Assembly (NCBI GenBank): GCA_951804945.1
Contig: OX638154.1
Coordinates: 44,764,001 to 44,828,000, forward strand
DNA from: Podarcis cretensis
Taxonomy: Eukaryota
DNA: 64,000 nucleotides
Reading direction: 5' to 3'
This document shows, in pieces, positions 19,109-56,818 of this stretch (position 1 is the stretch's first letter; each line of letters begins with the position of its first letter). The translations under genes were made by a program, and so were the position numbers. Below the pieces are notes generated by a model, which saw only the letters and a list, made by a program, of their open reading frames with translations, did not search any database and was not told the origin of the DNA.

Positions 19109-19114
19109 TTTATT
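19109..19114 (-). terminator. Polyadenylation signal of the double-domain chitinase
   Basis: AATAAA on the minus strand about 80 nt after the stop codon, the same spacing as in the paralogue. Confidence 0.65.
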
Positions 19115-19195: not shown

Positions 19196-22100
19196 TTAAT
19201 TCAGTGGCCAGTTGCAACACTTACAACTTTCATCAAAGACCAGGCCAGCTGCACAAGACATGGGGAATGTTGCAGTTCCAGCACAAATGTAGAATTTATT
19301 GGGATCGACTGGATTAACATACATGCCATCAGCTTTGTTTGCACAAAATTCTGTTCCAGGAGGAGTGGTGGGAGCATCTGGATCAGGTGTGGTTGTAGGC
19401 CCCGGAGTAGTAATAGGTTCAGGAGTGGTTGATGGTATTATGATGCTTCCTGGGTCACCACAAACTGAAAGAAACATGCAAAATCAGGAATCAGACATTT
19501 GCTTTCATCCACCAATAACTTCTTCCTAGAACTATTATAGTCTACGAGTATAAAAACCACCTGCTTTAGGAAGGAGGAATAGTAGTGAGCTGCACTTTCC
19601 ATAATGGGAAATATCATTACTCTCACATAATGTATGTGACTGGGTGTCAGAGCATTATATAATATGTTTGTATAAAATATCATGGAGGCAAAGCTTATTA
19701 TCCTGTATAAATTATTTTCTAATAAAATTCAGACACTCTGTATACAATGAGATTCATTTTGCTAAATAATGTTTTAAGCCATGCAGCAGCAACTGGGCAT
19801 TCAAAATAATGGATGCTCTAAAAGGAGCTTCTCACTCTGCTAGCTTGGTGGTTTAACACTAAACTAGAAATGTAAAAGCAATATTCCCCAAAATGAAGTA
19901 CAGTTGAACCTTGTTTTTTGAGCGTCTCGGAAGATGAACGTTTCGGTTTCTGAACGCCCGAAAACCTGGAAGTAATTGCTTCCATTTTCGAACGCACCTC
20001 GGAAGTCAAACAGCTTCCAAGGCACATTTCTCAATTTTCACCATTGAAATTGCCAACTGCCCTTTGTGCCTCACTTGTCAAATGTTTCAGAAGTCGAATG
20101 GTCTTCCAGAACAGATTACATTCGACAACCAAAGTTCCACTGTACTATGTTGTGTATGATTTGGTGTGATGGTCCATAGAAGCAAATGCCATGTGAAGTG
20201 ACTGTGCCTTTTTTGCCATACGCCCTGGTGAAAATCAACACAGTTGACTTTTAAGGAATGCATGCACTGCAATAAGTTCATCTGCTTCTTCCTTCATTTA
20301 AATAGCGCACACTAAGACATCGCGTGGCGAGATGAGCTTTTAAACACCATGTGCTGGTTCCAAAACATTTGCCACTAGGCTGGTTTGGACAATGAATGTG
20401 CATCTTTCCCATTACTGAAACATAGCTGCAAAGAGTCAGGTGTGGAATCTAAACAACTGTTTGGCTTTTGATAACTCCCCCACCTCCAATGATCCTTTGG
20501 TACCATCTTACCTTTGCCTGCAAGTAGGTTCTTCAGCTCATTTATGAGAGGGTAAGGTCCTTCACCACAGAATGAGCCACTGAAGTCATCCAGGTCAATA
20601 GCCCATACCATGCCACCACCAAATTTGTTGTCCTTCACAAACTGGGTCTATAAACAAAAAGGATAATGCTTTATGGCAAGCTCTGCTCCCAAGCAAGCAG
20701 TGAAAATTGTTGAGAAAAACCCACTAATTCAACACCAGTATGGCACCAGGAAAACTACCAAACAGGCTACTTGGCAAAATTACATCAGCCATTAATCTAG
20801 TCTTGATGTTTGTATCCTGAATGTTTGTGGGTTGGTCTACGTAGCCAACCAAGGCCACATTCACACTGCACCTTTAAAGCGCTATGATTCCCCTTTAAAT
20901 AGTCATGGCTTCCCACAAAGAATTCTGGGAGCTGTAGTTTATTAAGGGTACTGAGCATTGTTTGGAGACCCCTCTTCCCCTCCCAGAGCTCCAATCTCTC
21001 TTCACAGGGAACTCTGGGGATTGTAATTCTGTGATTGGAACAGGGGTCTCCTAACAACCCTCCGTGCCCTTAACAAACTACAGTTCCCAGAATTCCTTGG
21101 GAGGAGCCATAACTGTTTAAAGTGGTATCACAGGGCTGTAAATGGATGAATTACCATAATCCCTGGCCATGTGCCATGCTGGTTGATGGGAGTCCAACCC
21201 ACAATGGCTATTCCTGGTCTGCAATATGCAACTCCATTCTTCACTGCTGATGCCCTCTAAACATTCTGCCAGTCATGTGTAAACAGCTTCGTTTCCCCAC
21301 AGCTGGGAGAACATTTAAAGGACCCAACCATATGGGGGTATAAATGTTTTTCTAAGCAAGCAGCACCCACAGCACAATGTAGATTCCATGGGAAAAACAT
21401 GTGCAATAAAACCCTGCCCACATGGTTGAGTCATTTTATGTTATGGTTTTATTGTGTATTTCAGTGTATGATATAAATAAATCATTATACTTCAATTCCG
21501 CACTCTGAATAAACAAATAGTTGAGTAAACAAATAGCTCCTAAATGGCTGGGACAACATCTAAAGGTCACTTAGATCTGTAAATGAGAAATGGCAACTCC
21601 TGTGTTCAAATTATGCAACACAGGCATTCAGTACAGCACTGTGGGTAATAAGGCAGCATAAAATAAAAGGTCATAGTCAACAAAGGCAGCCTTACTTTGC
21701 ATCCATAGCTTTTTTTGTTGTCAAATCCAACCCACTCAGAACCTTTGTAAGCATAGGGAACACATTGGTCTTCAATCCATTTCACTGTAGCATCCCTTAT
21801 AAAGGTACAGATCTGCAAGCACAGTACGGTATTAATAGATTAATGGATTTGAATCAGATTAATCTGGTGGAACATGAAATTAAAGTCACAACAGAGAAGT
21901 TATTTGGTTTTAAATTATCTAATTCATGGAAACCACAGAAACAGAACTTTCTGTCCCAGTTAAGAGAGGAACACAGCAGACATCGCTGTTGACTTTTGGA
22001 GATGGAGGGCTACAGCCTTTGCAGGATGCCCTTGCAGGAACAATATGACTGCACCATAAAAGCTGCTTTGCAGACTAAGCAGCTGTTGTAAAAGTGGAGG

Positions 22101-25100
22101 TTTGAATTCCCCTACAGATTTGTTGTGTGGGTAAAACTACTCTGATATATGCAGATACCAAAATATTAGAAATTCAGCAAATAACCTCACACAACCGTAG
22201 TAACAGCTGCTAAGAAAAATTGTAATTTATCCAAATCCAGAAGGCAAGTAGAAAGACAGCATGATATTTATTTTGTAGCGTAATGTTGTCAAAATATTTC
22301 AGTGTGTTAGGTTCAAGATTTTGAAGGCACTTGTATATAAAATAATTTTGGCTCATTTGGTTTATATATTCTGGAAAAAAATATGAGAATGGCAGCAAAC
22401 CATGTGCAGTGCAGTCCTAAAGTATAGTTATGATGCAGCTTAATTCTTAGTAAGCGGGCATAAGATTGTAACTGTATTAGAGTGCAATTCTATATTCAGA
22501 AGCATGCTCCACTGAATTCAATAGGACTTATTCGCAGACAGGTAAGCATACATAGGACTGTAACCTGTTACCGGAAAAATCTGAGGGCTCCCTTGGACAA
22601 AAAGTAAAGACACCAACCAGAGTAAATTGGAGCAAATCAGCAGCCTGTAGGCTTGGTCTTTATTGAAGAAAGACTGTCGCGACAGGGTGCTCCCCTCACT
22701 TGCAGGTGAGAGGAAAGACACAGAAGAATAGTGTGCAAGGTCTTATAAAAACTTTTGAAATTCCCCTCCTCTAGGTCTAGCCCAGCCCCAGAAACATCAT
22801 GCATACATTACAGAAAGGAGGGGTTGAGGGAGGAGTTGTGGTGGTAACATCATGCATACATTACAGAAAGGAGGGATTGAGGGAGGAGTTGGTGGTAACC
22901 TGAGTGTCTTGTCACCTGGCTGGTTCCTCCTTTCCCCCTCCCCATGAGTCACTTCCAGGAACTTCCAGAAGACAAAGGGGAGTTTGCAGTTTCCTGCCCC
23001 CTGAGGGAAGATCTGATCAGTGTCCTTTGTTTCAGTCCATGCTGAATCCACTCCCATATGCAAGTTCTTTGTGATCTTGATTGTCTTCTGTCTGGGACCA
23101 TCAGGGTTGGCATAGCAACTGGGCAGGGCACCTGTGTATGTGCTGGGATGCTGAAGGGATTATGGCTGCCCTGTATCAAGTCTGCCCCATTTTGTAGTCT
23201 TTCCTTCATGGAGTAAAATAAAAGTGGAACAGTGCAAATCCAATGTATGGTTGATTTTCTATGAATTTATAACAGAAGCATAGCGTATGTAGTGCGTGAG
23301 TGTGAGTGTGTGTGAAGTTTGTACAAACAGAATGATTGGGGTGGGGGGGTTCCTGCTACAACCTAAAAGGCATCTTGCCCTAGGACTTCTCCAGCATCTT
23401 ACCTCATAGTAAGCCCAGAAACCAGCTTCACGGGTGTATGGTCCAGAAGAGCCAGCCCCAGAAGCAGGAGCACCCACTGATGTATCACTGGTAGTAAGCC
23501 TAAAGGTACGTCCATAGGTGGGAAATCCCATCATAAGCTTCCCAGCAGGAACACCATTGTCTCTCCAGTATTTCATGGCAAACTCCTGCAAATATGACAG
23601 TGTGAATTAACCTCACAATCGTTGTTTACCAACACTGTTACCGGGAAATTGGAATGGGGGTGAGAGACCTCCCCGCCCCACACAGCAACATCTACAACAT
23701 CTACAATCTACAAAGGCATTGCATCTGCAAGGGAAGCTCAGCTCAATTTGCAGAAGGAGCCTGCGACTCGCCTCTGAGCCCCAGGTCTCCAACAAAGGAA
23801 AACAGGGGAAGTGTCAGTACTAAATGTAGCAATTCACTTGATAAATGTATCTACGTACTGGCTCAATGGGAAGACTTTAGAAATTCATAAGAAATCACTC
23901 ATATCAATCTTCTCAGTTACAATGGCATTTAAAGGTAAAGGTAAAGGTACCCCTGCCCGTACGGGCCAGTCTTGACAGACTCTGGGGTTGTGCGCCCATC
24001 TCACTTAAGAGGCCAGGGGCCAGCGCTGTCCGGAGACACTTCCGGGTCACGTGGCCAGCGTGACATCGCTGCTCTGGCGAGCCAGAGCCGCACACGGAAA
24101 CGCCGTTTACCTTCCCGCTGGTAAGCGGTCCCTATTTATCTACTTGCACCCGGAGGTGCTTTCGAACTGCTAGGTTGGCAGGCGCTGGGACCGAGCAGCG
24201 GGAGCGCACCCCGCCGCAGGGATTCGAACCGCCGACCTTTCGATCGGCAAGCCCTAGGCGCTGAGGCTTTAACCCACAGCGCCACCTGCGTCCCTGGCTA
24301 CAATGGCATTTAGGACCCAGGAAAGTGAGGTATAAGGGGAGGGGTGTATGAGCCAACCATAATCCCCAAGAGATGTACAGTCATGTTTGCAGGGCCAGAC
24401 AGATAACCATCTCAATCACAATGCCTACCCACCCCATAGTGGGATGAAGCCCGGACAAGACAAAGGGCTGTATTTGACTTGACTTGGCAACCAGGGAACT
24501 GTAAATACTTTCCTTTGTACTGTGATGGAGTAAGTGTGAAAGACTATATTTGAGTGACATGGGCATGCCTGGATCTCACAATCTACCGAAGACCACACCT
24601 TTTCTGTGACATATCCATGATGTCTTGATGATGCATCCTGAGATGTATTATGGGAAACTTTGGGAAACTTTAAAATACTGGTGTAACCATTGTTCGGGGC
24701 TTCTGGCTGCTTCGTCTTTGTGGTAGTGGGAAGTCTTGTTGCAACGATAAAGATCAGGCCTACAGGCCACTGTTTTGCTTCTATCTCCTATAGCTAAAGT
24801 CTCATGTTTGTGACACCTGACCTGAACCTATGGGAGTCAAAGTTAGGCAGTTGTGGGGTTCTCCAAGGACTCCATGTTACAACACAAAGCAACCCGCTAA
24901 AGAAAATAAACCGTGCTTTATATTCTTACACAGTTGAAATATCTGAAGTCTCCAATATCAGCTGAACCAATGTACAGTGGGCTGTTGTGGCCTGTAAAGG
25001 TGTCCCAGCCACCATGGAAATCATAGGTCATCACGCTAATAAAATCCAGATGTCTGAAATGAAAAGTGCAGTTTAGAATTAGGCTGATTCAAACAACCAA

Positions 25101-28100
25101 GTCTAGGTAGGTTTTGTTATGTGGAGGTTCCGCACCCAGCACAGAGTGAAATAAACTTTTCACATCAGCATATTTTTGCAATGAAAACGTTTTTCAGAAC
25201 CTTATCAACCTCACCTGCAAGGGACCATGGGTCTGAGAGACCATCAGTCAGAATGTGGGGTAAAAAGCAAGTCAAAAGTCAGTCAAGGCCAAACTCTATG
25301 TGATGCTTATGTCTTTTCTGGCCTTGCCCAGAGGCTGCTGTGGTGGGGACTGAGAGTGAGAACCATGGTAGGGGACCATGCTTCTAACTGTAAAAAGCCC
25401 CCCTTCTGCACTTGCTATTCACAATGGAAGGAAAGCTCTCCCATTGACATCAAGGATGAAGGAGGGCAATTCTGATTGGGATTATGGTGGTTGCAAATTG
25501 TTAAAAACACCTTCCTGCCTGCCTTCACTTCATGGTCTTGATCTGGAGGGGGCGGAGGGCAGTATGCCTTAAAAAAATCAGCCATGTGAGGCCAAACAAT
25601 GCAACAAGTCTCGCAGGATGTTTGGCCTTTGGTACTCATTTCCAGTTGGCAGTCTCAGCTCTGGCAGCATGTGAAGCAATAATTGGAAAGGGAGTACACC
25701 TCTGTATGTAGCTTCCTTTAGCATCAAGTGATAAGGTTTACAGGCCATAGGACTGAAATTCCAAGCAGGCTTGATCAATTAAGCATTACTATAACTGCAT
25801 TTAACAAAGCTCTTTTTTTCTCTCCACTTACTTCCCTATTTCTTCAATTTCATATCCAGCATCAATGGTCGGTTTACCGGCAGAGACAGCTGCTGTCACC
25901 AACAACCTGTTGTTCCCAGTCTCTTTGGCCTCTTGGTCAAAAGCTGCTACCATTTCCTAAAGGAAGAGAATGAACTATTATCCCAGCCTTTTGTTAAGAA
26001 ACAGTCCTATTTCTACAGGTCTCTACAAACCTCTTCTGAGCAGCAAAGCTTTCTTCCCCAACTGCGAAGCCTGACCAGCCGGATTGCTGAACTTACTGAT
26101 CTCATACCTGGATCAGGATAGTGAAACGATGCTTGTCCTCAGGGGGGCTACCCCTAGAACCTGGATATTCGAAGTCCAGATCAATCCCATCAAAGCCAAA
26201 TTTGCGGAGGTATGCTATAACTGAGTTTATGAAAGTCTTGCGGTTGGCTGCAGTGGAGACCATGGTAGTGAATCTGAAGGAAACAAAAGCAACAGTGGAG
26301 TCTGGCAGCACCTTCTTAAAAGAGCATTCCTAGGCAAGAGTATAGCCTACCTTCATCCAATTTACCAAGGTACAGTTCTGCACCTCTGTTTTTCTTGCAT
26401 CTGTTGCTAGTATCTTTCCTTTTCTTTTGTTTTTTGTCAGCCAATCCAACTGCACATTGCTTTACAGACTATTTTTTTCTGTTCCTCAGCTTTGTTTTCT
26501 TGCTTTCTTTGCTTTATGCAGTTGAGATACTTCCATTATCAGCCACAGTCCTACCCTCAGTTATATGACATTTAGCTTTGCATAAATCTGTGTTTGGGTT
26601 TGTTCCCCCCCCACACACACACACCCTACATCTTGGTCTGCAGCACCTTGCAAGAGAGGGTGGAAGGCCAAACTTTCCTTATCTCTTCATGCTACCTGAA
26701 AGTGGAGAGTGGGGAAGGAAAGGCCAGAATGCATCTGAGGAAAGAATGGACTAACATCTCCCATGGATATCCCCGGTCTGGTCTGGTCAACATATGCAGT
26801 AAAAGAAGAGGGAAAGAGCCCTGAGGTGGTAAAATGGGCTGTACCATTTCAGTCTGGAGAGGAGGGTTGCTTTCAAATTTTTAGTGCACTTTGTGTTAAG
26901 AGTTTTCTTCAAGTACAAAGGATAGAACACTAAGATGCAGGCTAAACCATAATCTGTCTCTCATGTATTTTTAATCTGGAAAGGAACATTTTTAAAGTGG
27001 CATTATTGATCTGCAGCCTGAAATGGTACAGTCCATTATGCGCTTCAGGACTGTACCACCTCAATTTACTACAAATACAGACCAGGCATCTGCCTCCATT
27101 CCTGCCTTCCATCTCCTAAGGAAGGAATAAGAAAGCAGCAAACCCTGAATGTAAATATACAGCTGTCTATAGCTGGGTGCACATTATACCTTTAAAGAAC
27201 GCTCTTTCCCTCAAAGAACTCTGGGTACCATAATTTGTTAAGGGTGGCTGGGAATTGTCACTCCATGAAACGTAAACCACAGTGCCCAGAATTCTTTGAG
27301 GGAAAGAATTTGTTTCAAATGTGCTTTAAGTGTGTGATGTATACACAGTCGTGGGCACTGTCACATCTAAGAAGGAAGTGACTGAATTAGGCATGTCAGA
27401 GAATAGCTCTCCCGTCTCCTTGCACTTGCCATTCTCAGTCTCTTACTCTCCTGTTACAAAAAGTACAGAGAGGTCAAACAGACCTGGAATCTTGAGGGAG
27501 GGCATCCCAGATGGCACTGCTTAGCTTACAGGAGTCTGATTCCACTCACAGTCTGTCAGTTGTCAAATACTATCATGTTCAACAGTTGTATGCTGATTAC
27601 CACTCATGTTTCCAAAGTTATAGAGAAAACTTACTTCTGTGTACCAAAGTTCCACCCTCCAATAGCCAGCAATGTCACCAAGGCAGAATTTCTGTGAAAA
27701 GGAAATATATATATATAAACAAAAACTGAAAACAGATTTGATGTAGAAAATATACAGATATTGTTCTTGTTAAAACTAAGCTGCTCACTATTTATATCTT
27801 CTGCCTGCCAAAATTTCCCGCTGACTTCTACTTAATGCTTATATAAAGTCAAGTTTACATTACGGAACAAGTTCTTTCTTTATGAGGTCTACTGCTACCA
27901 ATGTATCATTATCACCAGATCAGATGGCACATCTGCAATATCTGTACAGTGGTACCTCGGGTTACATACTCTTCAGGTTACAGACGCTTCAGGTCTGTAA
28001 CCTGAACCAACCCAGAAATATTACCTCGGGTTAAGAACTTTGCTTCAGGATGAGAACAGAAATCGTACGGCGGCAGCAGGAGGCCCCATTAGCCAAAGTG

Positions 28101-31100
28101 GTGCTTCAGGTTAAGAACAGTTTCAGGTTAAGAACAGGCCTCCAGAATGAATTAAGTTCTTAACCCGAGGTACCACTGTATCAGTTTATGCTAGAGAAAT
28201 GTCTGGTGGACCCACAGCTTCTGTATCAGCTGCTAGAACAGCTCAGAAGCATCTTACAAAAAGTTAAGCACCTCTTTTACCCACATCACAGTTACATCTT
28301 AATGTTGTTTCTAAGAAAAAGCTGACCTCTGCTTTAGCGCTTGGAACTCTGGGAAGAGCCTGTCCTCGTCATTCCACTCATAAGGAGCAATCTTATTGTC
28401 GTTCATAGTTGCAAACGCATACATGAGGTGAGTGCAAAGATGTGGGTCCACGTTGTTTGGAAAGTACTTGGCTGGTTCAGGGCGGTACTGAGCCCAATTG
28501 GTGAAATAGCACACAACTTTGCAGGAATGGCCTGGTGAGAAAATGGAGATGGTGCCATTGTTGACACAAAGTCATGTTCAGAGTTCATTCAGTCATTATC
28601 CTCTAAAAGCGTGTCTGGACTGAGGATTTTTAAGCGGCAGACATAACAATTATGCAATCTTTCCTAGCTCTAAAGACAGTCCAGGGGCTCTAGTAGGAGT
28701 GGGGGCTACAGCACAAAATCCCAGAGCTAGTTTGTCACACAACTTTGAGATATCATTCCACAAGCCTACCATTTCCAATTTAAAGCTATAGTTCAGTGAT
28801 GGGGAACCAATATTGTTTCTGAAATAATACATGAACCCAAACACAGCTATCCTTCAAATTTCACATTTATCCAAGTTTTTTGATGCAGTTCTCCAATCAA
28901 GCGAAGTTTACTAGGGTTGCCATATTTCAGTGTTGAGCTTTTTTCAGTTCTGCCCAAAGTTGTTAAGCTTTTTTGCCAAAGTTGTTGAGCTTTTGTGGAT
29001 TCTTTTTTCAAATTTCTGTCTGGACACTGTTGCCGACTGCAGTATTCAAGATAAGGGAACCCTATGTTTACGAAACTGCATGTATGTTGGGAAAGATATA
29101 TAAAAATGAAGATATGCATAAAAATGAAGGTATTAATAAAAATAAATTAGTTAAAAATGCATTATATTAGGGGAAATGGCTTGCGAAAATGTGTTTATGA
29201 ACTGTCTATTAAAAATGTATTTATTAGGAGAAATTTGTATGAAAATGCTGGTGAATTTTCATGTGGTTTTTTTTTTTATTGCAAATTGCTGCAAAATGTA
29301 GGGAACTGAATCTAAGATAGGAAAAATGAGAAGCAAAGAGAACCTTCCTTTCCCTACTTATGGTCAACCTTTTGGAGAGTGGAGCCAGAAACCAAAGTGT
29401 GCAGATGTGTTCAAAGTGGCAAATGTTGGCAGAATATTATGCCAGAACATCACCTAGACAACTAAAATACAGATATCATATTAAATACATTTTGAGTGTT
29501 TATGTCTCTCCATTTATACATGTTTTTCACACACACACACGCGCACACACACATGCACAAATAAAATTGTGGACATATTTTATCACATCTTCACAATCAC
29601 TTGCTAGGCCACCAGAAGCCAGTTTAAAAATTGTTCCAGCCCATGAGCTGCTCCATCCCTACATCTTCCTACACCGCTAACTGTAACTTTTGTCCACAGC
29701 AAACTCACCATCCTCATCGGGATTTTCACTTGGCTTAGGAGTTGTTTCATCAGGAACCTGAGTAGTGGTTTCTTCAGGAGGTGGTGTTACGTCATCAGGA
29801 AGAGTAGTAGTTTCATCAGGAGGTATGGTGGGAGGATCAACAGTTGGAACATCACCACAGCCTAACAATAAGAAGTGCAGATGTTCAGAAAGGCATGTGG
29901 AAATCGCGAGTGCATTTAATATGTATTTTGACTTATGTGGCTTCTTTGACAATACTGAATTTGTTCAGTATTTTAAGCTGTCAGTAATATCTTATTGCTC
30001 TACTGACCTTTTGAGAAATACATTTAAGCTCCTGTTTTGATGGGAAATGGAATTTAATCTTTAAAAAATAATTACTCTGAGATTCACCTGAGACCTCTGA
30101 TCTAGGTTCACTACTGGTGTACATCATTGGATGGGCAAGCAGTAGGTTACATTTTTATTGCTAAAAAAGACCAAAGTAGCTTGCTGTTCCATAAGAACGA
30201 AACCTGATGTTGGAAGCTACAAAATCTGCACTTGGTCACAAGATAGAGGGCAGGAGGCAATAGCAAACTTAATTTGTATAGACAAAGGACCTACAAATTG
30301 GATACTATGCGGGAATTTGTTGCCAGATTAGCTAACAACCGAGGAAAGTCTCTGACATTGTCCCAGTGAGCCTCAATTGAGTGTAAAGGTAAAGGGACCC
30401 CTGACCATTAGGTCCAGTCGTGGCCAACTCTGGGGCTGGGGCGCTCATCTCGCTTTATTGGCCGAGGGAGCTGGTGTACAGCTTCCGGGTCATGTGGCCA
30501 GCATGACTAAGCTGCTTCTGGCAAACCAGAGCAGCACACGGAAACGCCGTTAGCCAGGTACAAATCAAATGACATGGGGGAGAACTTCATCAGTTCACAT
30601 TCTGCACTGAAGTCCCTTTGATACATGCTAGGGAATCAGATTTGCTGGAATTTTCCCACTGGCTACATACATACATACATACATACATACATACCTACCC
30701 ACCCAAGGAAGGAATGTCACACTGTTGTAAATAGGGCCACCTTGTATTTGGAGAGCCCGTGGAGGATCCTGCTTCACACACAGTGGAGCGCAAGATGGCC
30801 TTTGATGCTACATTTAGATGCCTTACCTCCTGCAAGGAGACTCTTCAGTTTGTTTATTAATGGGTAGGCTCCTTCACCACAGAATCCACCACTGAAGTCG
30901 TCCAAATCAATTGCCCATACCATGGCACCCCCAAACTTATTATCCTTCACAAACTGGGCCTGCAAGAGAATCATCATCAGCATCAGCATCATCATATTCC
31001 CATGATGCCATTTTCACATCAGGAGGAAGCTTCAGTTGCATCGGGCCTCTTCTTGTGCTATTCATATTACCATCTGACTTGTATTTCATTTAGTTGCTTT

Positions 31101-34100
31101 TTAAAACATTCATGCCCCACCCTTAAAAAGACCACTCGGGGCAGTTTTCAGCATATAACATTACAATTTCACGAAACAATATGGAATAATGCACACACAG
31201 AAATGGTATCTGCTTGTACATGGAACTCATTGGTTTTCCACACACTGAATCTTTGGAAGGGGAAGTCTTGCATGGAAGAAGTCACTTACATTACAACATG
31301 CAAATTGTGATAGCACAAAACATGACAGAATACACAAAGTTGAGAATGCTGATAACGATGTCTGTGACAAACCAAATGTAAGGGGGAAAGCTGTATGCAA
31401 AAAGGGTTCTTACTTTGTACTCATAACTCTTGGCATTGTCAAAGCCAACCCATTCGTTCCCTTTGGAGGCATATGGCACCTTCTGGTCTTCAATCCAACT
31501 AACCGTGGCATCTCTTATGAATGTGCAGATCTGCCAAAATATTATGATATTAGCAAGAGGACAAAATGAAGAAGTAGAATGGTCATGTCAAGAAAACAAT
31601 GACACTCATTGTGCTTAGAAATTACCACATGGTTAAGAGGCTTAGGATCATACCTGCAGCAGCTCTGCCTGTCACTTGCAGAAGAGGGCTCCTTTGTGAA
31701 TTTACTTGTATCTTTTAAATGTAATTGTACTCAATTGGTATTCAATTTGATTAGCCTCCTATTATAATAAATTTGCATAGGAGCCTATGCTTGTACCCAA
31801 AGATGCATAGGCTTCTCTACACATGCAGTCTGAACCTTCCATTTTGGCAGTTTATGGATTGTTTTTAGGGTACCTGTCTTTCCTGTGCAATCATTTCAAC
31901 TGTGTGGGGAGTGGCCAGTGGGCTGGCCACCTGTTCATAAGAACCCAGGAAGCTGCTTTATGTGCCCTTCTGAGATAGCTCAGTTGACACAGCATGAGAC
32001 TCTTAAGCGCAGGCTCGTGGGTTCAAGTCCGACCTTGCGCAAAAGATTCCTGCATTCCAGGTTGGACTAGACAACCCTTGTGGTCCTTTCCAACTCTACA
32101 ATTCTATGATTCTAAGTCCCACCATTCATCTATCTAGCTCAGTACCGTCTGCACCAATTGGTGGCAGCAGCTCCAGGAATACAAACGGGGGTGTCCTTCT
32201 GTAGCCCTATCTGGCAATGCCGGGGATTGAATCTGGGACAATCTGCATGCAAAGCAGATTCTCTGCCACTGAGCTACAGCCTTTTGTCATGAATATGCAT
32301 TAATACTTACCCAGAATGAATGCATTCGTGCATGGAATTGATGGCAGGCATTAATACTCATTCAATGAAGAAACAACCTGAATTTTCCTCACATCATTAC
32401 CTCATAGTAGGCCCAGAACCCAGCTTCTCTAGTATAAGGTCCAGAAGAGCCAGCCCCAGAAGCAGGAGCACCCACAGATGTATCACTGGTAGTAAGCCTG
32501 AAAGTGCGTCCATAGGTGGGAAATCCCATAAGAAGCTTGTTAGCTGGAACACCATTGTCTCTCCAGTATTTCATTGCAAACTCCTGTTTTGGGAAAAAAA
32601 GAATATGATATGGAGGGGGTTGTGGGATTTAATATCTGTCTTATTCTATGGGAGTTGGTCAAATCTATTCTCCATCTCCTTACACAGTTGAAATACTTTA
32701 AGTCACCCTGGTCTTTGGATCCCACATGCAATGGACTGTTGTGGCCTGTGAAGGTGTCCCAGCCGCCATGGAAGTCATATGTCATCACACTGATGAAATC
32801 CAGGAGCCTGGAGGAAGTTGCACAAGAAGCAGAGTTAACAGCCAACATTCTGACACAGGCACTAGGAGTGTATCTAAGAGAAGCCAAAGTCAGAGAAGGG
32901 GGCTATTATGAAGAAAATGCATGTTTTCATTTACTTACTTTCCTATTGCGGCTATTTCGTACCCAGCGTCAATGGTTCCTTTCCCTGCAGACACAGCTGC
33001 TGTGATTAGCAGTCTGGGGCGACCTGTGCTGGCAGCCTCAGCTGTAAAGGCCTCCAACATTTCCTAAAGAGGGAGGAGGAACTATTAGTGAATACCTATT
33101 AGCGGAGCAAGAGCAAACACGTGCCATTTTTTTCTGGAACTAGGCAGCTGTGGTCATTTTAATTTCCTACAATGCATTGCATCAATGTGGGGCACTGATG
33201 CAAATTAAAATGACAGTGCCCAAACAGTAGGATGCCTAGGCACCCTAAACGTGGAGTCAGACATGCCTATTAGAAGGTCATTTGTCTTTCTGACCATGAG
33301 GTTAAATGACCATTCTAAAACTGACAATGGTATCAGAGATCTCAGTCAAGAGTACCAATTTATCAGGGATTCTCTCAGTAACTAAGTCAGAAAGCTGAGC
33401 TAGTCCAGCGTCTTGCCTTTCATCTCAAGAGATCCATCTGAAAGGCCAGAGCCTAAGCTTATAATCTGGTCTGCCTCATACTGATCTAGCTTTATATCTG
33501 TGCCATTTAGCAGCAAAGTTCCTCTTCACATGTTCAGCAATTGCCAGATTCTAATGTATATTTTCCCCCCTTTGTGATACTGAGAGGAAAACATTTTAGC
33601 TCTGAAAATGGTAACAATATATCCCAAACATTAATCTGTTTTTAATCTGCAAAGATCAGCAACATGCTGATTAACACAATCCCGAAAAATGCTGGGTTTC
33701 TGTTATTTCCAAGACAGGGTTGGATAAGCAACTTTAGGGGGAACCTTGTATATAAGTTGAGGTTCTTGGTATATAGCCCATTTAGGGGCAGAAACAACTC
33801 AACAGCATATATCATCCATTCTACTTATGAGATTTCTATGTTTGTTAAAAGCTTTCAGTAGGCTAAGCTAGCTATGGAAGTATACTAGATCTGTGAGAGA
33901 ATGCTGGGCTGGTACCTCACCTGAATCAAGATGGTAAACCGTTGCTTATCTTCAGGGGGGCTGCCTCTAGAGCCTGGGTACTCAAAGTCCAAGTCAATCC
34001 CATCAAAATTAAATTTGCGGAGATATGCTATCACTGAATCAATGAAGGTCTTTCGGTTGGCAGCTGTGGCGACCATTGTGGTGAATCTAAAAGGAACAGA

Positions 34101-37012
34101 TCTCATTCTTAGTATTGCATTTTTAATGTGGTACTAAGGAAAACTTACTTTAAGGTAAAAATGCCTCCCTTAGAGAATGTATGAACACTTGCAAGAACAT
34201 GTTCGCAAATAAATTAATACTTAGCTCTAGCCCTGCCTTTTCGTACAGACTACTTAATTTCTCTTTATTGCTGTGAATTTTCAGAATTTCTAACATCTGC
34301 TAGAGCTTAGTGTGGTTTCTAACCATCTGGTTGATTCATAATTTGAACTCTTTGTCAGTGTAGAGGTAAATAAACAAAAGCCGTTCTCACTTCTGAGTGC
34401 CGAAATTCCACCCTCCGATAGCCAACAGCTGAACCAGTTCGGAATTCCTAAAAGGCACAGAATATATTAATATATTAAAGTGAATAGAGAAACGTTTTAA
34501 AGATATAGGTTTATACACTCAAGACAGTATTATACACAACAGTACAGCACCATTCCCTGTGCAATTATGTATTTATGCGGCACATGCATCAATCGGATGA
34601 ATCTAACCCAAAGGAGTTGCATTTAGGCCCCACTGAAACCAACTAACTTTTCACACATTTATTTCTATAGGACCTAAGTGTGTCTAACTTTAGTTGGATC
34701 CAACCCAATGCTTATTTCTTTATCACATTTGTATCTTCCCTTTCTTACAAGAAGCCCAAAGCAGCTTACATGGAATTATCCTATTTTATTTCTACTAACA
34801 ACAGTGTTGGTCAAGCTAAAATGTGGGGATTTGCCCAAGACCAATTGGTAAGTAACATGGACTGAATGAATATTTAAACCCAAACCAACTTCCATGTGCT
34901 ATTCACTTCACCCGAGTGTGCAAAATTATTGCATACATTGGAGAAAGAGGGCAAGGAGGTTGTTTTCCTCTTCTCTCATAATACTAGAACCAAAGAATCT
35001 AAGTGTTGGGAGACACAAGATGGAAAAAAGGAAATCCTCCTTCACACAGTTGCTACTTCAAGATACAGTGATGGCCACCAACCCAGAGACCTTTAAATTC
35101 ATGATGAATAAGGCTAGTCACAGTGTTTCATTGCTGCCTCCAGGATCAGTGGCAGTATGTCTCTAAATACTAGTTGATGGGGAACACAAGTGGAGAGAAT
35201 GCTATTGTGCTCATGTCCTTTCCATGGGCATCTGGTTGGTCAATGTGAGGACAGAATGTATACTTTTGACCTGATCTACAGGGGCTCGTGTTCATTCACT
35301 CTACCATGGACTGTTAATGCCTTTCAGTAAAACTCTTCAAACTTCTAGTTAGTATATTAGTATTAGCATGCGAAGAACCATCTTAGTATGAATTCACATC
35401 CATTCTCTAGTTCAGGCATAGGCAAACTCCGGCCCTCCAGATGTTTGGGACTACAATTCCCATCTTCCCTGGCTAACAGGAAGGACCAGTGGTCAGGGAT
35501 GATGGGAATTGTAGTCCCAAACATCTGGAGGGCCAGAGTTTGCCTATGCCTGCTCTAGTTGATGCAATCAGAGTTAAGGAATTGTGGGCCTAATATTATA
35601 AACCAATCGCAGTGCACGGCAAATATTATATTGCAGCTAGAAGCAAAGTTCCTAAATAATAGCTAGTGATGGCATGGCAAAAGCTGATGTAATGCACAGC
35701 AGCAAGCGAAGACTGAAGCAGCTGACATCACCACATTAGCTGAAATGTGTCATGTGAAGGGACACTGTTCAGAAGAATTCCTATCACCCTGGCACATAAA
35801 TTGACAGTTACGTGGCCCTAAACAGACATCCATATGTGAAATGTTGCTCTGCGGTTTTGCATTGCTGCTTACTTTTGCTTCAGTGCAGTAAACTCTGGGA
35901 AGAGCCTGTCTTCATCATTCCATTCATAAGGGGCAATCTTATTTTCATTCATCGTAGCGAAAGCATAGATCAGGTGGGTGCAGAGTTGTGGGTCCACATT
36001 GTTTGGGAAGTATTTGGCTGGCTCTGGCCTATACTGAGCCCAGTTGGTGAAATAGCATACAAGTTTGCATGCCGAGCCTGATCAGAAGAAACAAAACAAT
36101 GAAGCAGCTGTTTAAAATACTCATTACATCTCATTTTTTAATTAAAATCCCTTCCCAACCGTATATTTATATGCCAGGTAAGCATGCAAGGACTGTGTAG
36201 GAAGCAAGAACAAAACCCCTACGGGACAAACTTTTGGAAAGATGGGATGTGGCTATTTTAATTTGTACCATTTTGCCAAAAGTCTTCGTCACTCAGGCAA
36301 ATTTTGCATGAAGCAAGATGATAAATTGTCGAGTGAGGGAGAAGACTTGGAGTATATATATACAACCAGGAGTGCCAACTTGAATAAAATATGGGGGGGG
36401 CACTGGTTAATTTGAGTTAAATAGCAGTTCTGATTATTTGTAAATATTTCTTTCACATGGAATTCCCAGGATTCTTGATGGCTTACCATATAAATTATCC
36501 CTTTTTTACCTTTGAAATGACTCTAAAGTAATGAGACATGTCTACCTGGGATGGCTAAGGTAGAAGGAAAGTAAATCTGAGCTTCTCAAGTCTGAAATTC
36601 AGTTGACAGCACCATGCTGGGTAGAGTATGTTTTATCGCTTTTTAAAATTATTATTAATATTCTGTTGGGAGCCTACCAGAGTGGCTAGGGAAACCCAGC
36701 CAGATGGGCAGGGAATTAATTAATTAATTAATTAATTGCATCTTCTGCACACACACGCACACACAAAAACACACTACTCATCCCTAGTTAAGGAATGGAA
36801 TAAGTACTTACTGATTTGCAACTGCAGCAAAACAGCCAAACCTGCAAAGAACAGAGAAGAGAGTCCAAAGTAATGGAAAAATTGCGCAGTGTAGCTTAAC
36901 AAAGCACCATTCTTGGTGTCTGTGAAAAGAAATCCCACCTTACAAACCTTAAGAGAGACAGTCTACAAAATATTATAAATGACTCACCGACCCACAGCAG
37001 CACCTTCCCCAT
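19196..37012 (-). CDS. CHIA-like chitinase with two tandem GH18 catalytic domains (SP, GH18a, acidic linker, GH18b, linker, CBM14), 20 coding exons, 899 aa
   Basis: Exons: 36988-37012, 36812-36841, 35873-36077, 34391-34447, 33921-34086, 32939-33063, 32684-32807, 32401-32583, 31414-31530, 30827-30959, linker 29709-29861, 28327-28531, 27635-27691, 26108-26273, 25832-25956, 24930-25053, 23403-23585, 21696-21812, 20512-20647, 19196-19464. Total 2700 nt, open throughout, all GT-AG. Only one ATG/signal-peptide exon pair ([21 protein letters not shown]) and only one CBM14/stop exon. Chitinase identity is near certain; the single-transcript model is inferred from splice signals. Confidence 0.85.
19901..20142. 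mobile_element. Tc1/mariner (Tigger-like) MITE
   Basis: TA|CAGTTGAACC ... GTTCCACTG|TA, imperfect TIRs with TA TSD. Confidence 0.65.
20855..21145. mobile_element. Palindromic MITE-like repeat (related copy at about 27170-27345)
   Basis: Long imperfect inverted arms GAATTCTGGGAGCTGTAGTTT / AAACTACAGTTCCCAGAATTC. Confidence 0.55.
22793..22898. repeat. Tandem duplication of an approximately 53-bp unit
   Basis: AACATCATGCATACATTACAGAAAGGAGGG(G/A)TTGAGGGAGGAGTTG... occurs twice, inside an LTR-like segment starting at about 22566. Confidence 0.8.
23932..24298 (-). mobile_element. Full-length young Sauria SINE
   Basis: tRNA-like head (GGGACGCAGGTGGCGC...GGTTCGAATCC), (ACCTTT)n tail, 14-bp TSD TACAATGGCATTTA. 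Confidence 0.9.
27947..28178. mobile_element. Tigger-like MITE
   Basis: TIRs CAGTGGTACCTCGGGTTA / TAACCCGAGGTACCACTG with TA TSD. Confidence 0.85.
29709..29861 (-). other. Phase 1-1 inter-domain linker exon (153 nt), acidic and Pro/Thr-rich
   Basis: Acceptor cttcttattgttag|GC and donor GATG|gtgagt. Encodes [51 protein letters not shown](G). No CBM14 cysteines follow. Confidence 0.88.
30384..30552 (-). mobile_element. 5'-truncated Sauria SINE
   Basis: Reverse complement of the 3' half of the copies at 38541 and 57001, with an ACCTTT tail. Confidence 0.8.
31972..32113 (+). mobile_element. tRNA-Lys-derived SINE with CR1-like 3' tail
   Basis: TAGCTCAG...GAGACTCTTAA...GGTTCAAGTCC head followed by GGTTGGACTAGA...TTCCAAC...(ATTCTATG)n. 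Homologous to 58681-59300. Confidence 0.7.
35413..35552. mobile_element. hAT-like palindromic MITE
   Basis: Near-perfect hairpin CAGGCATAGGCAAACT ... AGTTTGCCTATGCCTG; 8-bp TSD CTCTAGTT. Confidence 0.88.
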
Positions 37013-37054: not shown

Positions 37055-37110
37055 CACTTTATAGGAGGGCAAGGCCTTCTTATCGCCGTGGAACCTGCAC
37101 ACCTGGACTC
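37055..37110 (-). promoter_or_regulatory. Proximal promoter of the double-domain chitinase
   Basis: Minus strand: GATAAG (37079-37084), TTGCCCTC, TATAAAG (37057-37063) 45 nt above the ATG; E-box CACCTG near 37100. Confidence 0.65.
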
Positions 37111-37491: not shown

Positions 37492-37522
<31 letters not shown>

Positions 37523-37662
37523 CCAGAGCAGCGATGTCACGCTGGCCACGTGACCCGGAAGTGTCTCCGGACAGCGCTGGCCCCTGGCCTCTTAAGTGAG
37601 ATGGGCGCACAACCCCCGAGTCTGTCAAGACTGGCCCGTACGGGCAGGGGTACCTTTACCTT
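37285..37662 (+). mobile_element. Full-length young Sauria SINE upstream of the double-domain chitinase
   Basis: Nearly identical to 23932-24298; internal (GGCTCT)n expansion; 12-bp TSD TAGATTCACAAT (37257-37268, 37663-37674). Confidence 0.9.
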
Positions 37663-38540
37663 TAGATTCACAATGTGGTAACGTGGGTATTTTTACTGAG
37701 TGCCCAACTGCCTTGCTTGCTACATTTTTTATGAAAAACACAACTAGGTCGAAGTATTCTGCAGATGATGCTTTATGTTTGCAGTCCACACACCCTTCCC
37801 ACCAACATCCCCCCATGGACTGGATAAGGGGGGTTTTTTGGTGCCTTTCAAAGCTGTTTCGCACCCTGCCCAGCTGCTCACACCTGCAGATTCCGTTTGT
37901 TCCTGCTTGTCTACACGCCAGGGGGCACTGACAGAATGTCTTTTCCTCTGTGCCATGGTGTTCACACTTTGAGTGAAGAACTCCAGTCAGTGTGAAGCTG
38001 GTTTGAGAAACAATGAATCCTGTTGTACCATATAACGAAGTATAGAATACATACCCATTTTGGTTAATGCCTTGTGAACACAGACTAAAAAGCAGAGCTG
38101 GAAACAGTGAGTGTACATTAAATGGAAATGTGACTGCAGCCTTATGTTTGCTGAAGCATTTTATCAGTGTCTGCTATAATTTATTAGTCAACTTGAGTCA
38201 GCCAACATCCACTCTCCATGGCCATGTATCTAGCATACTTACCTGTATGACATAGACTGAATGAAAACAGGATTTGGAGCTGGGTGCCATCAGAATATTG
38301 CTGACACCAAACTCCAAACCAATCTCTCGTTTTCTCACCAAGCACTTTGCTATTGAGCATTTCCTCTGCAACACACTTCAGAATTGCAAAGTAATCCCCC
38401 ATCCCCTTCTCTGGCTGAAACCAGCCACCATATTACAGAGCTATTAATTCATTACAGTACTTTTCTTTGAATCAGTGGATTCATGAGCAATTATTCCAAG
38501 CTTCAGAAACCGCAGCTTGTCTTTTGAGTAAGACTAGCAA

Positions 38541-38901
38541 GGGACACGGGTGACGCTGTGGTCTAAACCAGAGAGCCTAGGGCTTGCCAATCAGAAAGTC
38601 AGCGGTTTGAATCCCCGCGATGAGGTGGGCCCCCGTTGCTCAGTTCCTGCTCCTGCCAACCTAGCAGTTCGAAAGCACGTCAGAGTGCAAGTAGATAAAT
38701 AGGTACCGCTCCAGCGGGAAGGTAAACAGCATTTCTGTGCGCTGCTCTGGTTTGCCAGAAGCAGCTTAGTCATGCTGGCCACATAACCCGGAAGCGGTCT
38801 GCAGTCAACGCCAGCTTCCTCAGCCAGTAAAGCGAGACGAGTGCCACAACCCCAGAGTCGTCCGTGACTGGACTTAACGGTCAGGGGTCTCTTTACCTTT
38901 A
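38541..38901 (+). mobile_element. Sauria SINE (second, more diverged subfamily)
   Basis: GGGACACGGGTGACGCTGTGG head, conserved body, TTTACCTTT tail. Confidence 0.85.
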
Positions 38902-39839
38902 CTAGCTATGGTTCTTATCCATAACATGGAGGGTGGGTCCCCATTTGTGGAATGCCTGCTAATATTGAGGGGTAAAACATTCCTGTTTACCAATAAATTT
39001 GATGGTTAAAATAAACTGTTCCAAGAAATCCTTGAAATCAGCTGTGAGGATATTTGGCTTTAAATTTGCTATTGCATTGTTTTGCTGTTTTGTTGTTCGA
39101 CACTTAGGGCTCCTTTGGGAGAAAGGTAAGACAGAACTTTAAATAAAGAATGATGGTGGTGATTATGAAAATGCCAGGGGAGTCCATTTTCTTTCTGCTT
39201 CTCAAAATCAAGTGTTACATTGACTATTGAGATATGAGGAGAACCAACAAAATGGTTACATAAACGCAGGCTTATCAGCCTTGAAGCTACTGGTACTCTC
39301 TATCTTAGTCGGTCAAGGTCCCAAGGTCTCAAAGTCATTAACCTGCACCTAGAAGTCAACAGCTCCAATAGAAATGGGTGAAGTGAGCTCCACCTTCTCA
39401 AACCCTGGGATCACACCTCCTGCTACCAAGAGGTGCACCTGCATACAGGTGCATGCAGACAAATGCGATTACATTATTTCTATGGCACCATTTCATTTTG
39501 GGCTTACAAGCAAAATCTGCCATCGCTCCTTCTTTCATCTCTAGTTAAGTCAGTCATGACTAGCAACGTATTTCAATAGGTCTACTAAACACTATGGTTT
39601 ATGTTGAACACAAGCTATTGATTCATAAAAATAAATTCCACTACTTTCAGTGTCAGTAATTTGGGACAACCTAAAACCAGTCACATTTAATTTTTTTGCA
39701 AGAATTAATCTGTTTAGAGTTTAATCTTTAATTGCCTCTATTTGAAGCATAATATTAGCTAGATAAGCCAACATTCTTTGATTTTGCATTAGACACCCAC
39801 TTTGTATTGTCATTGTTAAGACAGGTTCTGGAGCTTGTT

Positions 39840-41008
39840 TTTTTTTTTTTTTTTATAAAAGATTTTTATTAATTTCCAATTTTTTAACAGAAACAAAAAA
39901 CAACAAAAGAAACAGACAAACAAAAAAAACTCATGTTTTCATAACCTTATTTTCATAACCCTCTTTTCCCGGACTTCCCCATACCTTTCCCTTTTTGCAT
40001 CCTTAATTTAGTACCATTATTCAGCAACCTATCTTGCCCAATTAAATATAAATTTATCCTCTTTCTCTATTCCACCCTTAATTTTAAACCCAATTATCGC
40101 TGCAATTCTACATCTTCTTTTCCCTCAGCATTTTAACACTCCTCAGTTTTATAATAATTCTTAAGATACGTCTTAAATTTCTTCCAATCTTCTTCCACAG
40201 TCTCTTTCTCTTGGTCGCGGATTCTGCCGGTCATTTCTGCCAGTCCCATAAAGTCAATCACTTTCGCCTGCCATTCCTCCAGCGTGGGTAGCTCTTGTGT
40301 CTTCCAATACTTTGCTAGAAGGATCCTTGCTGCCGTAGTAGCGTACAAAAAGAAATTCTTATCCTTCTTCGGCACCAACTGGCCGACCATACCCAAGAGA
40401 AATGCCTCTGGTTTCTTGTTAAAGGTGCACTTAAGCACTTTCTTAATTTCATTATAAATCATTTCCCAGAAGGCCTTAATCTTTGGGCAGGTCCACCAGA
40501 GGTGGAAAAAGGTACCCTCAGTCTCTTTACATTTCCAGCATTTATTATTGGGCAAATGATAAATCTTCGCAAGCTTGACTGGGGTCATGTACCACCTATA
40601 GATCATTTTCATAATGTTTTCTCGTAAGGCATTGCATGCCGTGAATTTAATGTGGTCCATAACTGCTCCCAGTCAGCAAACATAATGTCATGACCTATGT
40701 CCTGTGCCCATTTAACCATAGCAGACTTCACTGTCTCATCTATTGTATTCCACTTCAACAGCAAGTTGTACATTCTTGATAAATTCTTAGTATTGGGTTC
40801 TAACAATTCTGTTTCCAATTTCGATTTCTCCACCTGGAAACCAATTTTCCTGTCTTGTTTGAAAGCCTCCATTATTTGAAAATAATGGAGCCAATCTCGT
40901 ACCTTGGACTTTATTTTCTCATAACTTTGTAATTTAAATTCACCACCTTCTTGTTCTAAGATCTCAGAGTATTTCGGCCAATTGGTTGTCATATTAAGTT
41001 TCTTTACT
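39840..41008 (-). mobile_element. 5'-truncated L1-clade LINE (ORF2 C-terminus, 3' UTR, poly-A)
   Basis: ORF 40133-40660 has the CCHC knuckle CWKC...HLWWTC; a frameshift at about 40650 separates it from ORF 40609-41034; poly(T) on the plus strand at 39838; 17-bp TSD AGGTTCTGGAGCTTGTT (39823-39839, 41009-41025). Confidence 0.9.
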
Positions 41009-56700: not shown

Positions 56701-56818
56701 CAGGCATCCCCAACCTTCGGCCCTCCAGATGTTTTCCCATCATCACTGGTCCTGTTAGCTAGGGATCATGGGAGTTGTAGGCCAAAACATCTGGAGGGCT
56801 GCAGGTTGGGGATGCCTG
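56701..56818. mobile_element. hAT-like palindromic MITE
   Basis: TIRs CAGGCATCCCCAACCT / AGGTTGGGGATGCCTG; 8-bp TSD CCTTAGAT. Confidence 0.88.

What the first reader, a model, noticed from the sequence alone, without database searches (positions are those of the whole stretch)
19196..37012. A vertebrate chitinase with two tandem, apparently active GH18 catalytic domains on one polypeptide
Seen: two complete sets of CHIA catalytic exons (3-10) share a single promoter and signal-peptide exon pair (36812-37012) and a single CBM14/stop/polyA exon (19196-19464). Between them a 153-nt phase 1-1 exon ends in a strong donor (G|gtgagt at 29709) and joins in frame to the acceptor at 28531. This gives an unbroken 2700-nt ORF (899 aa): SP, GH18, linker, GH18, linker, CBM14. 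Both domains keep [14 protein letters not shown] and the cleft tryptophans (NW, GGW, HGGW, MVW). Known: mammalian CHIA and CHIT1 have one GH18 domain plus one CBM14, whereas multi-GH18 chitinases are familiar from insects (group II/III, Cht10/Cht7). Inference: a lizard gene built by tandem duplication and fusion, plausibly a digestive adaptation to arthropod prey and convergent on the insect design. I cannot verify whether it has been described.
Basis: partly seen in the sequence, partly recalled or inferred. Interest (0 to 1): 0.95.

Follow-up and report, generated by a model that had tools for sequence, protein, structure and literature searches.

The report
Two-domain chitinase gene in lizards
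This lizard gene joins two complete chitin-cutting enzyme modules into one secreted protein, which is normal in insects but unusual in vertebrates, and the same model already sits undiscussed in public lizard annotations.

Summary
On the minus strand, exons 1-11 of chitinase copy A (37012-29709) and exons 3-11 of copy B (28531-19196) add up to 2700 nt, or 899 codons plus stop.

- **Gene structure:** Copy B has no signal-peptide exons. Copy A has no working CBM14. The donor at 29709 and the acceptor at 28531 are both phase 1.
- **Public models:** The same fusion, with the same junction (…ENPDEDG|[12 protein letters not shown]…), is modelled in Lacerta agilis and Zootoca vivipara (both 899 aa). 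It is also modelled in four Podarcis species, the tegu and a cordylid.
- **Transcript evidence:** An 838-aa ORF on a 3107-nt public contig, too short to hold the introns, carries the junction.
- **Contrast with artefacts:** Ordinary merge artefacts of tandem chitinase genes keep an internal signal-peptide piece. This junction has none.
- **Conservation:** Both domains keep the catalytic motif. dN/dS between them is about 0.07. The A/B duplication predates the tuatara-squamate split.

RNA contigs laid on the window did not cross the junction. Isoform ratios, the tissue of expression, and the protein itself are therefore unshown. I found no paper describing this gene. It is a new variant of a known kind, with moderately high interest.

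The parts
37058..37063 (-). TATAAA box about 50 nt upstream of the start codon
   Evidence: Read from the sequence. Not tested.
36988..37012 (-). Exon 1 of copy A: ATG plus the first part of the signal peptide (25 nt), donor G|gtgagt
   Evidence: Its only homologue in the window is exon 1 of copy C at 12381.
36813..36842 (-). Exon 2 of copy A: rest of the signal peptide (30 nt), ends in phase 1
   Evidence: Its only homologue in the window is exon 2 of copy C at 11667.
30827..36077 (-). Exons 3-10 of copy A, the first GH18 module: 36077-35873, 34447-34391, 34086-33921 ([10 protein letters not shown]), 33063-32939, 32807-32684 (MTYDFHGGW), 32583-32401, 31530-31414, 30959-30827
   Evidence: Splice sites and frames. 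Pfam GH18. 95-100% identical to Podarcis and Lacerta models.
29709..29861 (-). Linker exon (153 nt, phase 1 to phase 1), rich in Pro, Thr, Asp and Glu. It ends in the donor G|gtgagt that joins to copy B.
   Evidence: No Pfam family. The modelled linker has pLDDT under 50. An RNA-like contig covers 29720-29863.
29677..29708 (-). Read-through tail (EFAVDKSYS, stop TAG at 29679-29677). It is a remnant of the first roughly 10 codons of a lost CBM14.
   Evidence: Compare EFCANKADG in copy B, and the read-through ends of the tuatara and Tiliqua models. DNA further downstream cannot be aligned to a CBM14.
28532..29708 (-). 1177-nt intron between the two modules. It holds AATAAA at 29280 and 29225 and a repeated element at about 28840-29400.
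   Evidence: Very high depth in the DNA run. No signal-peptide exon found.
20512..28531 (-). Exons 3-10 of copy B, the second GH18 module: 28531-28327, 27691-27635, 26273-26108 ([10 protein letters not shown]), 25956-25832, 25053-24930 (MTYDFHGGW), 23585-23403, 21812-21696, 20647-20512
   Evidence: Spliced contigs show joints 27690>28327 and 26273>27635. Pfam GH18.
19196..19464 (-). Last exon: second linker, CBM14 and stop codon TAA (19198-19196)
   Evidence: Pfam CBM_14, E = 1.3e-11. Also.
19109..19114 (-). AATAAA polyadenylation signal of the gene

Best explanation
**Gene structure.** Positions 37012 to 19196 on the minus strand form one gene. Its promoter and two signal-peptide exons drive a transcript in which the linker exon of the first chitinase module (A) is spliced to exon 3 of the second module (B).

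**Product.** The result is a secreted protein of 899 residues: signal peptide, GH18 domain A, a disordered acidic Pro/Thr-rich linker of about 50 residues, GH18 domain B, a second linker, and one C-terminal CBM14 chitin-binding domain.

**Origin.** The gene arose from two tandem CHIA-like genes. The upstream one lost its CBM14, and a donor site now lies at the old linker/CBM14 boundary. The downstream one lost its promoter and signal-peptide exons.

**What is shown.** The gene structure, the conservation of the junction across lizard families, one intron-free transcript contig, and purifying selection on both domains.

**What is inferred.** Both domains keep the catalytic DxxDxDxE motif and the cleft aromatic residues, so both probably hydrolyse chitin, with the single CBM14 anchoring the pair to the substrate. 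Activity of both domains, any synergy, gut expression, and whether the protein stays in one piece are all untested.
For: **Gene structure**
- Exon lengths sum to 2700 nt, and all exons are open in phase.
- The junction phases match.
- Copy B has no exon 1 or 2 homologue, and the spacer has no credible first exon.
- Copy A keeps only about 10 decayed CBM14 codons.

**Public models with the same junction**
- Lacerta agilis XP_033008598.1 and Zootoca vivipara XP_034977983.1, both 899 aa.
- Podarcis raffonei, P. muralis (three model versions) and P. lilfordi.
- Salvator merianae A0A8D0B9X3 (881 aa) and Hemicordylus capensis.

**Transcript evidence**
- The Logan-derived protein P0336 (838 aa) sits on a 3107-nt contig, which cannot hold the more than 15 kb of introns. 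It carries …ENPGDG|HPCKIVCYFTNW….

**Contrast with merge artefacts**
- The A-to-B junction has no signal-peptide remnant.
- Obvious over-merged models keep one: the third domain in P. lilfordi and Hemicordylus, and the frog Leptobrachium.

**Other species**
- The Rhineura model keeps the signal peptide, 13 residues of linker tail and then domain B.
- The tuatara A models lack a CBM14, and the tuatara B model lacks a start codon and signal peptide.

**Conservation**
- A-domains and B-domains form separate clades that each include tuatara.
- Across families, A-A identity is 89-98% and B-B identity is 84-97%, with all motifs kept.
- dN/dS between A and B in the window is 0.066, with dS about 1.5.

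**Structure and assembly**
- Each domain aligns over its full length to AMCase and CHIT1 structures.
- The model shows two folded barrels plus a CBM14, with both linkers below pLDDT 50.
- The spacer is tiled by DNA contigs without mismatch.
Against: - **No junction read in this species.** No read or contig laid on this window crosses 29709>28531. One RNA-like contig stops at 28527 and another at 29720.
- **Some annotations split the locus.** RefSeq for Tiliqua scincoides gives a 446-aa A protein ending in read-through (…GDG|EFDVDQS*) and a 420-aa B protein starting at an internal Met. Ensembl for tuatara also gives separate models.
- **Possible A-only isoform.** AATAAA signals at 29280 and 29225 could end an A-only transcript.
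- **Uneven depth in one run.** The tool warns that such holes prove nothing, and the species is not the window's.
- **Predictors often merge tandem genes.** Gene predictors often merge tandem chitinase genes (PMC1945033).
- **No protein evidence.** No protein-level data exist.
Confidence: 0.78

Rival explanations
1. The locus gives several products and the fused mRNA is a minority. Most transcripts would either end by polyadenylation in the spacer, giving SP-GH18A-linker without a CBM14, or skip the A module by splicing exon 2 directly to exon 3B (also phase 1), giving an ordinary SP-GH18B-CBM14.
For: - A read-through stop lies 9 codons after the donor, followed by two AATAAA signals.
- The Tiliqua and tuatara A models end exactly this way.
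- The Rhineura model shows a signal peptide joined almost directly to domain B.
- The exon 2 donor and the exon 3B acceptor share phase 1.
- Run X1 shows deep copy B exons without copy A exons, which is weak evidence.
Against: - The donor G|GTGAGT is strong.
- RefSeq pipelines for Lacerta, Zootoca, Podarcis and Hemicordylus all chose the fused form.
- The only full transcript-sized contig found is the fused form.
- Run X2 shows copy A and copy B exons at similarly low depth.
Confidence: 0.15
2. These are two independent genes. Copy A is a truncated chitinase without a CBM14, and copy B is transcribed from an unrecognised promoter and first exon. The fused models would then be prediction artefacts.
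For: - Tandem chitinase genes are often merged by predictors (opossum Genscan models in PMC1945033).
- The Tiliqua and tuatara annotations split the locus.
- No junction read was seen here.
Against: - No signal-peptide exon for copy B is found in the window.
- No signal peptide appears in any B-only model; they start at an internal Met or inside the intron.
- The intron-free contig carries the junction.
- The junction peptide is conserved across Lacertidae, Teiidae, Cordylidae and a skink-like species.
- The Rhineura model keeps the linker tail in front of domain B.
Confidence: 0.06
3. The fused protein is made, but it acts as a polyprotein. The exposed linker is cut by gastric proteases or during secretion, releasing a free GH18 A and a GH18 B-CBM14 in fixed 1:1 amounts.
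For: - The 47-residue linker is predicted to be disordered.
- It is poorly conserved in sequence between families, while the flanking domains are conserved.
Against: - Pro/Thr-rich linkers of this kind are usually O-glycosylated and protease-resistant in secreted chitinases. This is general knowledge and was not tested.
- Nothing here bears directly on cleavage.
Confidence: 0.12
4. The tandem arrangement is an assembly artefact.
For: None was found.
Against: - Independent short-read contigs of the same species tile 28158-29182 and 29155-30204 with 0 mismatches.
- Copies A and B share only 73-90% exon identity and have no similar introns, so they cannot be collapsed or duplicated reads.
- The arrangement recurs in many species.
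Confidence: 0.01

Closest known systems
Predicted squamate proteins already in public databases: Lacerta agilis XP_033008598.1 and Zootoca vivipara XP_034977983.1 (899 aa), Podarcis models, Salvator merianae A0A8D0B9X3, and Hemicordylus capensis 'probable chitinase 10'
   Same: They share the architecture, the junction peptide and the length. The window's exons are 90-100% identical to them.
   Different: They are automated predictions named only by similarity. I found no paper that discusses them. Some are truncated at the 5' end or over-merged with the next gene.
Mammalian acidic chitinase (CHIA/AMCase; PDB 3FXY, 8FG5) and chitotriosidase (CHIT1; PDB 1WAW, 5HBF)
   Same: They share the GH18 fold, the catalytic DxxDxDxE motif, the exon structure, the signal peptide, the Pro/Thr linker and the C-terminal CBM14. 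Each lizard domain aligns over its full length at 510-540 bits.
   Different: The mammalian enzymes have one catalytic domain per polypeptide. The lizard gene has two catalytic domains and one CBM14.
Insect group III chitinase (Cht7; Ostrinia furnacalis ChtIII, PDB 5GZU/5GZV; PMC5786006)
   Same: It has two GH18 domains followed by a CBM14 on one chain.
   Different: - It has an independent origin. The lizard domains nest among vertebrate chitinases, and 5GZU matches at only about 276 bits.
- The insect enzyme's two domains were reported as non-synergistic and linked to chitin synthesis rather than digestion (PMC5786006 abstract).
- As I recall, the insect protein has an N-terminal membrane anchor. 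That point was not checked here.
Insect group II chitinase (Cht10; PDB 5Y29, 6JAV; PMC5827449)
   Same: It carries several GH18 domains on one polypeptide for degrading structural chitin. NCBI even named the cordylid model 'probable chitinase 10'.
   Different: It has four or five GH18 units with several CBM14 domains. It is an arthropod lineage and matches at only about 315 bits.

Membership tests
GH18 chitinases of the vertebrate CHIA/CHIT1 clade | Glyco_hydro_18 (PF00704) domain | tested here: met
   Exons of both modules match PF00704 above the curated cut-off. Each domain aligns over its full length to AMCase and CHIT1 chains.
GH18 chitinases of the vertebrate CHIA/CHIT1 clade | Catalytic motif DxxDxDxE with the glutamate proton donor, which distinguishes enzymes from chi-lectins | tested here: met
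   [10 protein letters not shown] is present in exon 5 of both modules in the window. It is also in both domains of Lacerta, Podarcis, Salvator and Hemicordylus.
GH18 chitinases of the vertebrate CHIA/CHIT1 clade | N-terminal signal peptide and C-terminal CBM14, one each per protein | tested here: met
   There is one signal-peptide exon pair (judged by reading, no predictor was run). There is one CBM_14, in the last exon.
GH18 chitinases of the vertebrate CHIA/CHIT1 clade | Single catalytic domain per polypeptide | tested here: not met
   There are two GH18 modules in one reading frame and in public models and a transcript contig.
GH18 chitinases of the vertebrate CHIA/CHIT1 clade | Chitin hydrolysis at acidic pH and expression in stomach | not testable with these tools
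The RNA-like runs are coded and give no tissue.
Arthropod multi-domain chitinases (group II Cht10, group III Cht7) | Two or more GH18 domains on one polypeptide | tested here: met
Arthropod multi-domain chitinases (group II Cht10, group III Cht7) | Common descent with the arthropod genes | tested here: not met
   Domains A and B are sister clades inside vertebrate chitinases. PDB scores are 510-540 bits to human and mouse enzymes, against 276-315 bits to insect ChtII and ChtIII. The lizard gene works like them but is not a member.

The most novel reading that the evidence does not exclude
A chitinase with two catalytic domains is an ancient feature of all Lepidosauria, more than 250 million years old and fixed before tuatara and squamates split. 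It is a major intact gastric enzyme whose two active domains act together on one chitin fibre through a single CBM14. Under this reading it is the only natural multi-GH18 chitinase lineage in vertebrates, fully convergent with insect Cht7/Cht10, and secondarily reduced in some lineages such as amphisbaenians.
Probability: 0.4. Interest if true: 0.75.

Novelty: new variant of a known kind. Interest (0 to 1): 0.6.

Why it matters
**Gap in the literature.** Vertebrate chitinases are treated in the literature found here as single-domain enzymes. Multi-domain GH18 chitinases are discussed for arthropods and microbes. Dietary-adaptation studies count CHIA gene copies (for example PMC5955627, PMC11789784).

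**What a conserved fusion would change.** A conserved two-domain fusion in lizards adds a different route to higher chitinolytic capacity. It shows that counting genes can miss catalytic domains.

**A natural experiment.** The locus offers natural comparisons for testing whether tandem GH18 domains act together:
- fused forms in lacertids, teiids and cordylids;
- a reduced form in Rhineura;
- single-domain paralogue C next door.

**Annotation value.** It gives a simple rule for telling real chitinase fusions from over-merged tandem genes. Real fusions have no internal signal-peptide remnant at the junction.

Tried and rejected
**Laying public runs on 26050-31600.**
- The RNA-like contigs confirm two copy B introns and cover the linker exon.
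- None crosses the A-B junction. The result is neutral, not negative.

**Searching exon 3B alone for short fragments with an upstream extension.** Only distant fragments came back, and none was from close relatives.

**Searching exon 8B against cluster representatives.**
- No close two-domain representative appeared.
- The search did supply longer proteins, which I used as queries to reach the squamate models.

**DNA alignment of the sequence behind the donor to a CBM14 exon.** The score was no better than shuffles, so the 'fossil CBM14' is limited to about 10 codons.

**Scan of the spacer for an alternative first exon.** Only weak donors and non-signal-like peptides were found, one of them inside a GT microsatellite.

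**Joined model.** Searches used single exons by reference, or public protein ids. The folded protein is the Lacerta agilis model, not the window's own.

**Other notes.**
- Six paper searches found no description of a squamate two-domain chitinase. The library lacks most subscription journals, so this is not proof of absence.

Full report
**What is in the window.**
- The minus strand carries three tandem chitinase copies of the CHIA type.
- Copy A has a TATA box, a start codon at 37012, two small signal-peptide exons, eight GH18 exons and a 153-nt linker exon ending at 29709.
- Copy B begins with exon 3 at 28531 and ends with a linker-CBM14-stop exon at 19464-19196. An AATAAA follows at 19114.
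- Copy C (12381-2456) is an ordinary complete gene with its own signal-peptide exons and CBM14.
- Copies A and B share 73-90% exon identity and no intron similarity, so the duplication is old.

**Checking the observation.**
- I fixed splice sites exon by exon with canonical GT-AG sites, open frames and matching phases.
- The exon sizes of A and B are identical for exons 3-9 (205, 57, 166, 125, 124, 183, 117 nt).
- The linker exon ends in G|GTGAGT in phase 1. Exon 3B follows a good pyrimidine tract and also starts in phase 1. The split codon reads Gly.
- Patterns built from exons 1 and 2 hit only copies A and C, with none expected by chance.
- The 1177-nt spacer offers no convincing ATG-signal-peptide-donor combination.
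- Pfam finds GH18 in both exon sets and CBM14 only in the last exon. The linker has no family.

**Reads.**
- Two copy B introns are confirmed by spliced contigs when laid on 26050-31600.
- DNA contigs tile the spacer without mismatch.
- A 167-nt contig covers the linker exon with 21 unmatched letters on its upstream side, as expected if it is spliced to exon 10A.
- No contig crosses 29709>28531. One stops at 28527 and one at 29720.
- Depth gaps cannot be interpreted, as the tool itself warns. This evidence is neutral on the key junction.

**Evidence from other species.**
- A joined model may not be searched, so I searched single exons by reference. I then used a returned gecko protein as the query.
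- This uncovered public models with the same architecture.
  - Lacerta agilis XP_033008598.1 and Zootoca vivipara XP_034977983.1 are both exactly 899 aa.
  - Podarcis raffonei, P. muralis and P. lilfordi also carry it.
  - So do the tegu Salvator merianae (881 aa) and the cordylid Hemicordylus capensis.
- The window's exons are 90-100% identical to the Podarcis and Lacerta proteins. Residue 380 of the P. raffonei model bridges 29707 and 28532.
- The cordylid cluster also contains a Logan-derived 838-aa ORF on a 3107-nt contig. An ORF of 2.5 kb on a 3.1-kb contig leaves no room for more than 15 kb of introns, so this is a transcript.
- That contig reads …ENPGDG|HPCKIVCYFTNW…. Its linkers resemble the skink Tiliqua most closely.
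- A chimera between paralogues would switch at homologous positions. It would not place a whole B module behind a whole A module at an exon boundary.

**Real fusion or merge artefact.**
- Predictors often merge tandem chitinase genes. An older paper noted two-GH18 Genscan models in opossum (PMC1945033).
- The junctions tell the cases apart.
- In the P. lilfordi 1361-aa model, the Hemicordylus three-domain isoforms and a frog model, the extra domain is preceded by a piece of signal peptide (…[19 protein letters not shown]…). These are merged neighbours.
- The A-to-B junction never has such a remnant, in any species.
- The Rhineura floridana model reads signal peptide, then 13 residues of linker tail (DEPTTPQPSDENG), then [12 protein letters not shown] and domain B with its CBM14. 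Even where the A catalytic part is absent or skipped, domain B depends on the A promoter, the signal exons and the linker-to-3B splice.
- B-only models in Tiliqua and Eublepharis start at internal methionines. The tuatara B model starts inside the intron without a Met. The tuatara and Tiliqua A models end by reading through the donor into a few CBM14-like codons.

**Age and selection.**
- In a domain tree, the A domains and B domains are sister clades with 98/96 support. Each contains a tuatara sequence. Copy C types lie elsewhere.
- The duplication therefore predates crown Lepidosauria. The tuatara models show the same two defects, so the fusion probably does as well. This last step is inference.
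- Across families, A-A identity is 89-98% and B-B is 84-97%. A versus B within a protein is 80-86%.
- Summed exon by exon, dN/dS between A and B in the window is 0.066, with synonymous sites near saturation.
- The catalytic and cleft motifs are intact in every A and B domain examined.
- Each domain aligns end to end with AMCase and CHIT1 structures.
- An AlphaFold2 model of the Lacerta protein has mean pLDDT 69.6. It shows two folded barrels and a folded CBM14, joined by two linkers below pLDDT 50.

**How it most likely works.**
- The gene makes one secreted protein with two probably active endochitinase domains on a flexible, probably glycosylated tether, and one chitin anchor at the C-terminus.
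- Activity, synergy, gut expression and integrity of the tether are inferred and not shown.
- An A-only isoform is possible, from the read-through stop at 29679-29677 and AATAAA at 29280 and 29225.
- A B-only isoform by exon 2 to 3B splicing is also possible.

**Comparison and novelty.**
- Each domain is a member of the vertebrate CHIA/CHIT1 clade, but the single-domain rule of that clade is broken.
- The gene resembles insect Cht7 and Cht10 in design only (PMC5786006, PMC5827449).
- The gene models are already public. Six literature searches found no paper on them.
- I rate it a new variant of a known kind, with interest 0.6.

Noticed in passing
window 32583-32401 versus 23585-23403 (exon 8 of copies A and B): Exon 8 is far more alike between the two modules than any other exon. 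DNA identity is 90% and protein identity 97%. The synonymous difference is 0.30, against 0.60-0.90 elsewhere. This suggests gene conversion between the two modules.
   Followed up: partly
window 12381-2456, minus strand: A third chitinase copy (C) is a complete ordinary single-domain gene. It has its own start codon (12381), signal-peptide exon 2 (11667-11642), GH18 exons and a CBM14 (2599-2456). It belongs to a different clade from A and B.
   Followed up: partly
public models P0323 (Podarcis lilfordi CAI5777633.1) and P0331, P0332, P0202 (Hemicordylus capensis): These three-GH18 models carry an internal signal-peptide fragment before the third domain. They look like over-merging of the fused gene with the neighbouring copy C.
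   Followed up: partly
public model P0320 (Rhineura floridana XP_061488240.1): This amphisbaenian model has a signal peptide, 13 residues of the A linker tail, domain B and a CBM14. It has no A catalytic domain. Either the A exons were deleted, or the model reflects exon skipping.
   Followed up: no
window 36070-36060 and 28524-28514; 29861-29850 and 19464-19450: Both modules carry an extra cysteine four residues before the CYFTNW cysteine (…ACKLVC…, …SCKVVC…). Both also carry a cysteine just after the domain end (…AGGC…, …GKVC…). These are conserved in the A and B domains of all species seen. The first is absent from copy C types (…AYKLVC…).
   Followed up: no
window 30378-30551, 23935-24107, 37510-37670, 38725-38902, 57155-57328: A dispersed repeat of about 175 nt (SINE-like) occurs in several introns and flanks. 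It shows enormous depth in DNA and RNA-like runs. Positions 27910-28280 and 28840-29400 are also high-copy.
   Followed up: no
window 35407-35558: A 152-nt stretch matches its own reverse complement at 86%, so it is a palindromic element. Related copies lie at 48288-48436 and 56696-56830.
   Followed up: no
window 40133-41034, minus strand: Two overlapping ORFs of 175 and 141 aa look, by reading only, like the C-terminal part of a LINE ORF2, with a cysteine-rich CWKC…HLWWTCP motif.
   Followed up: no
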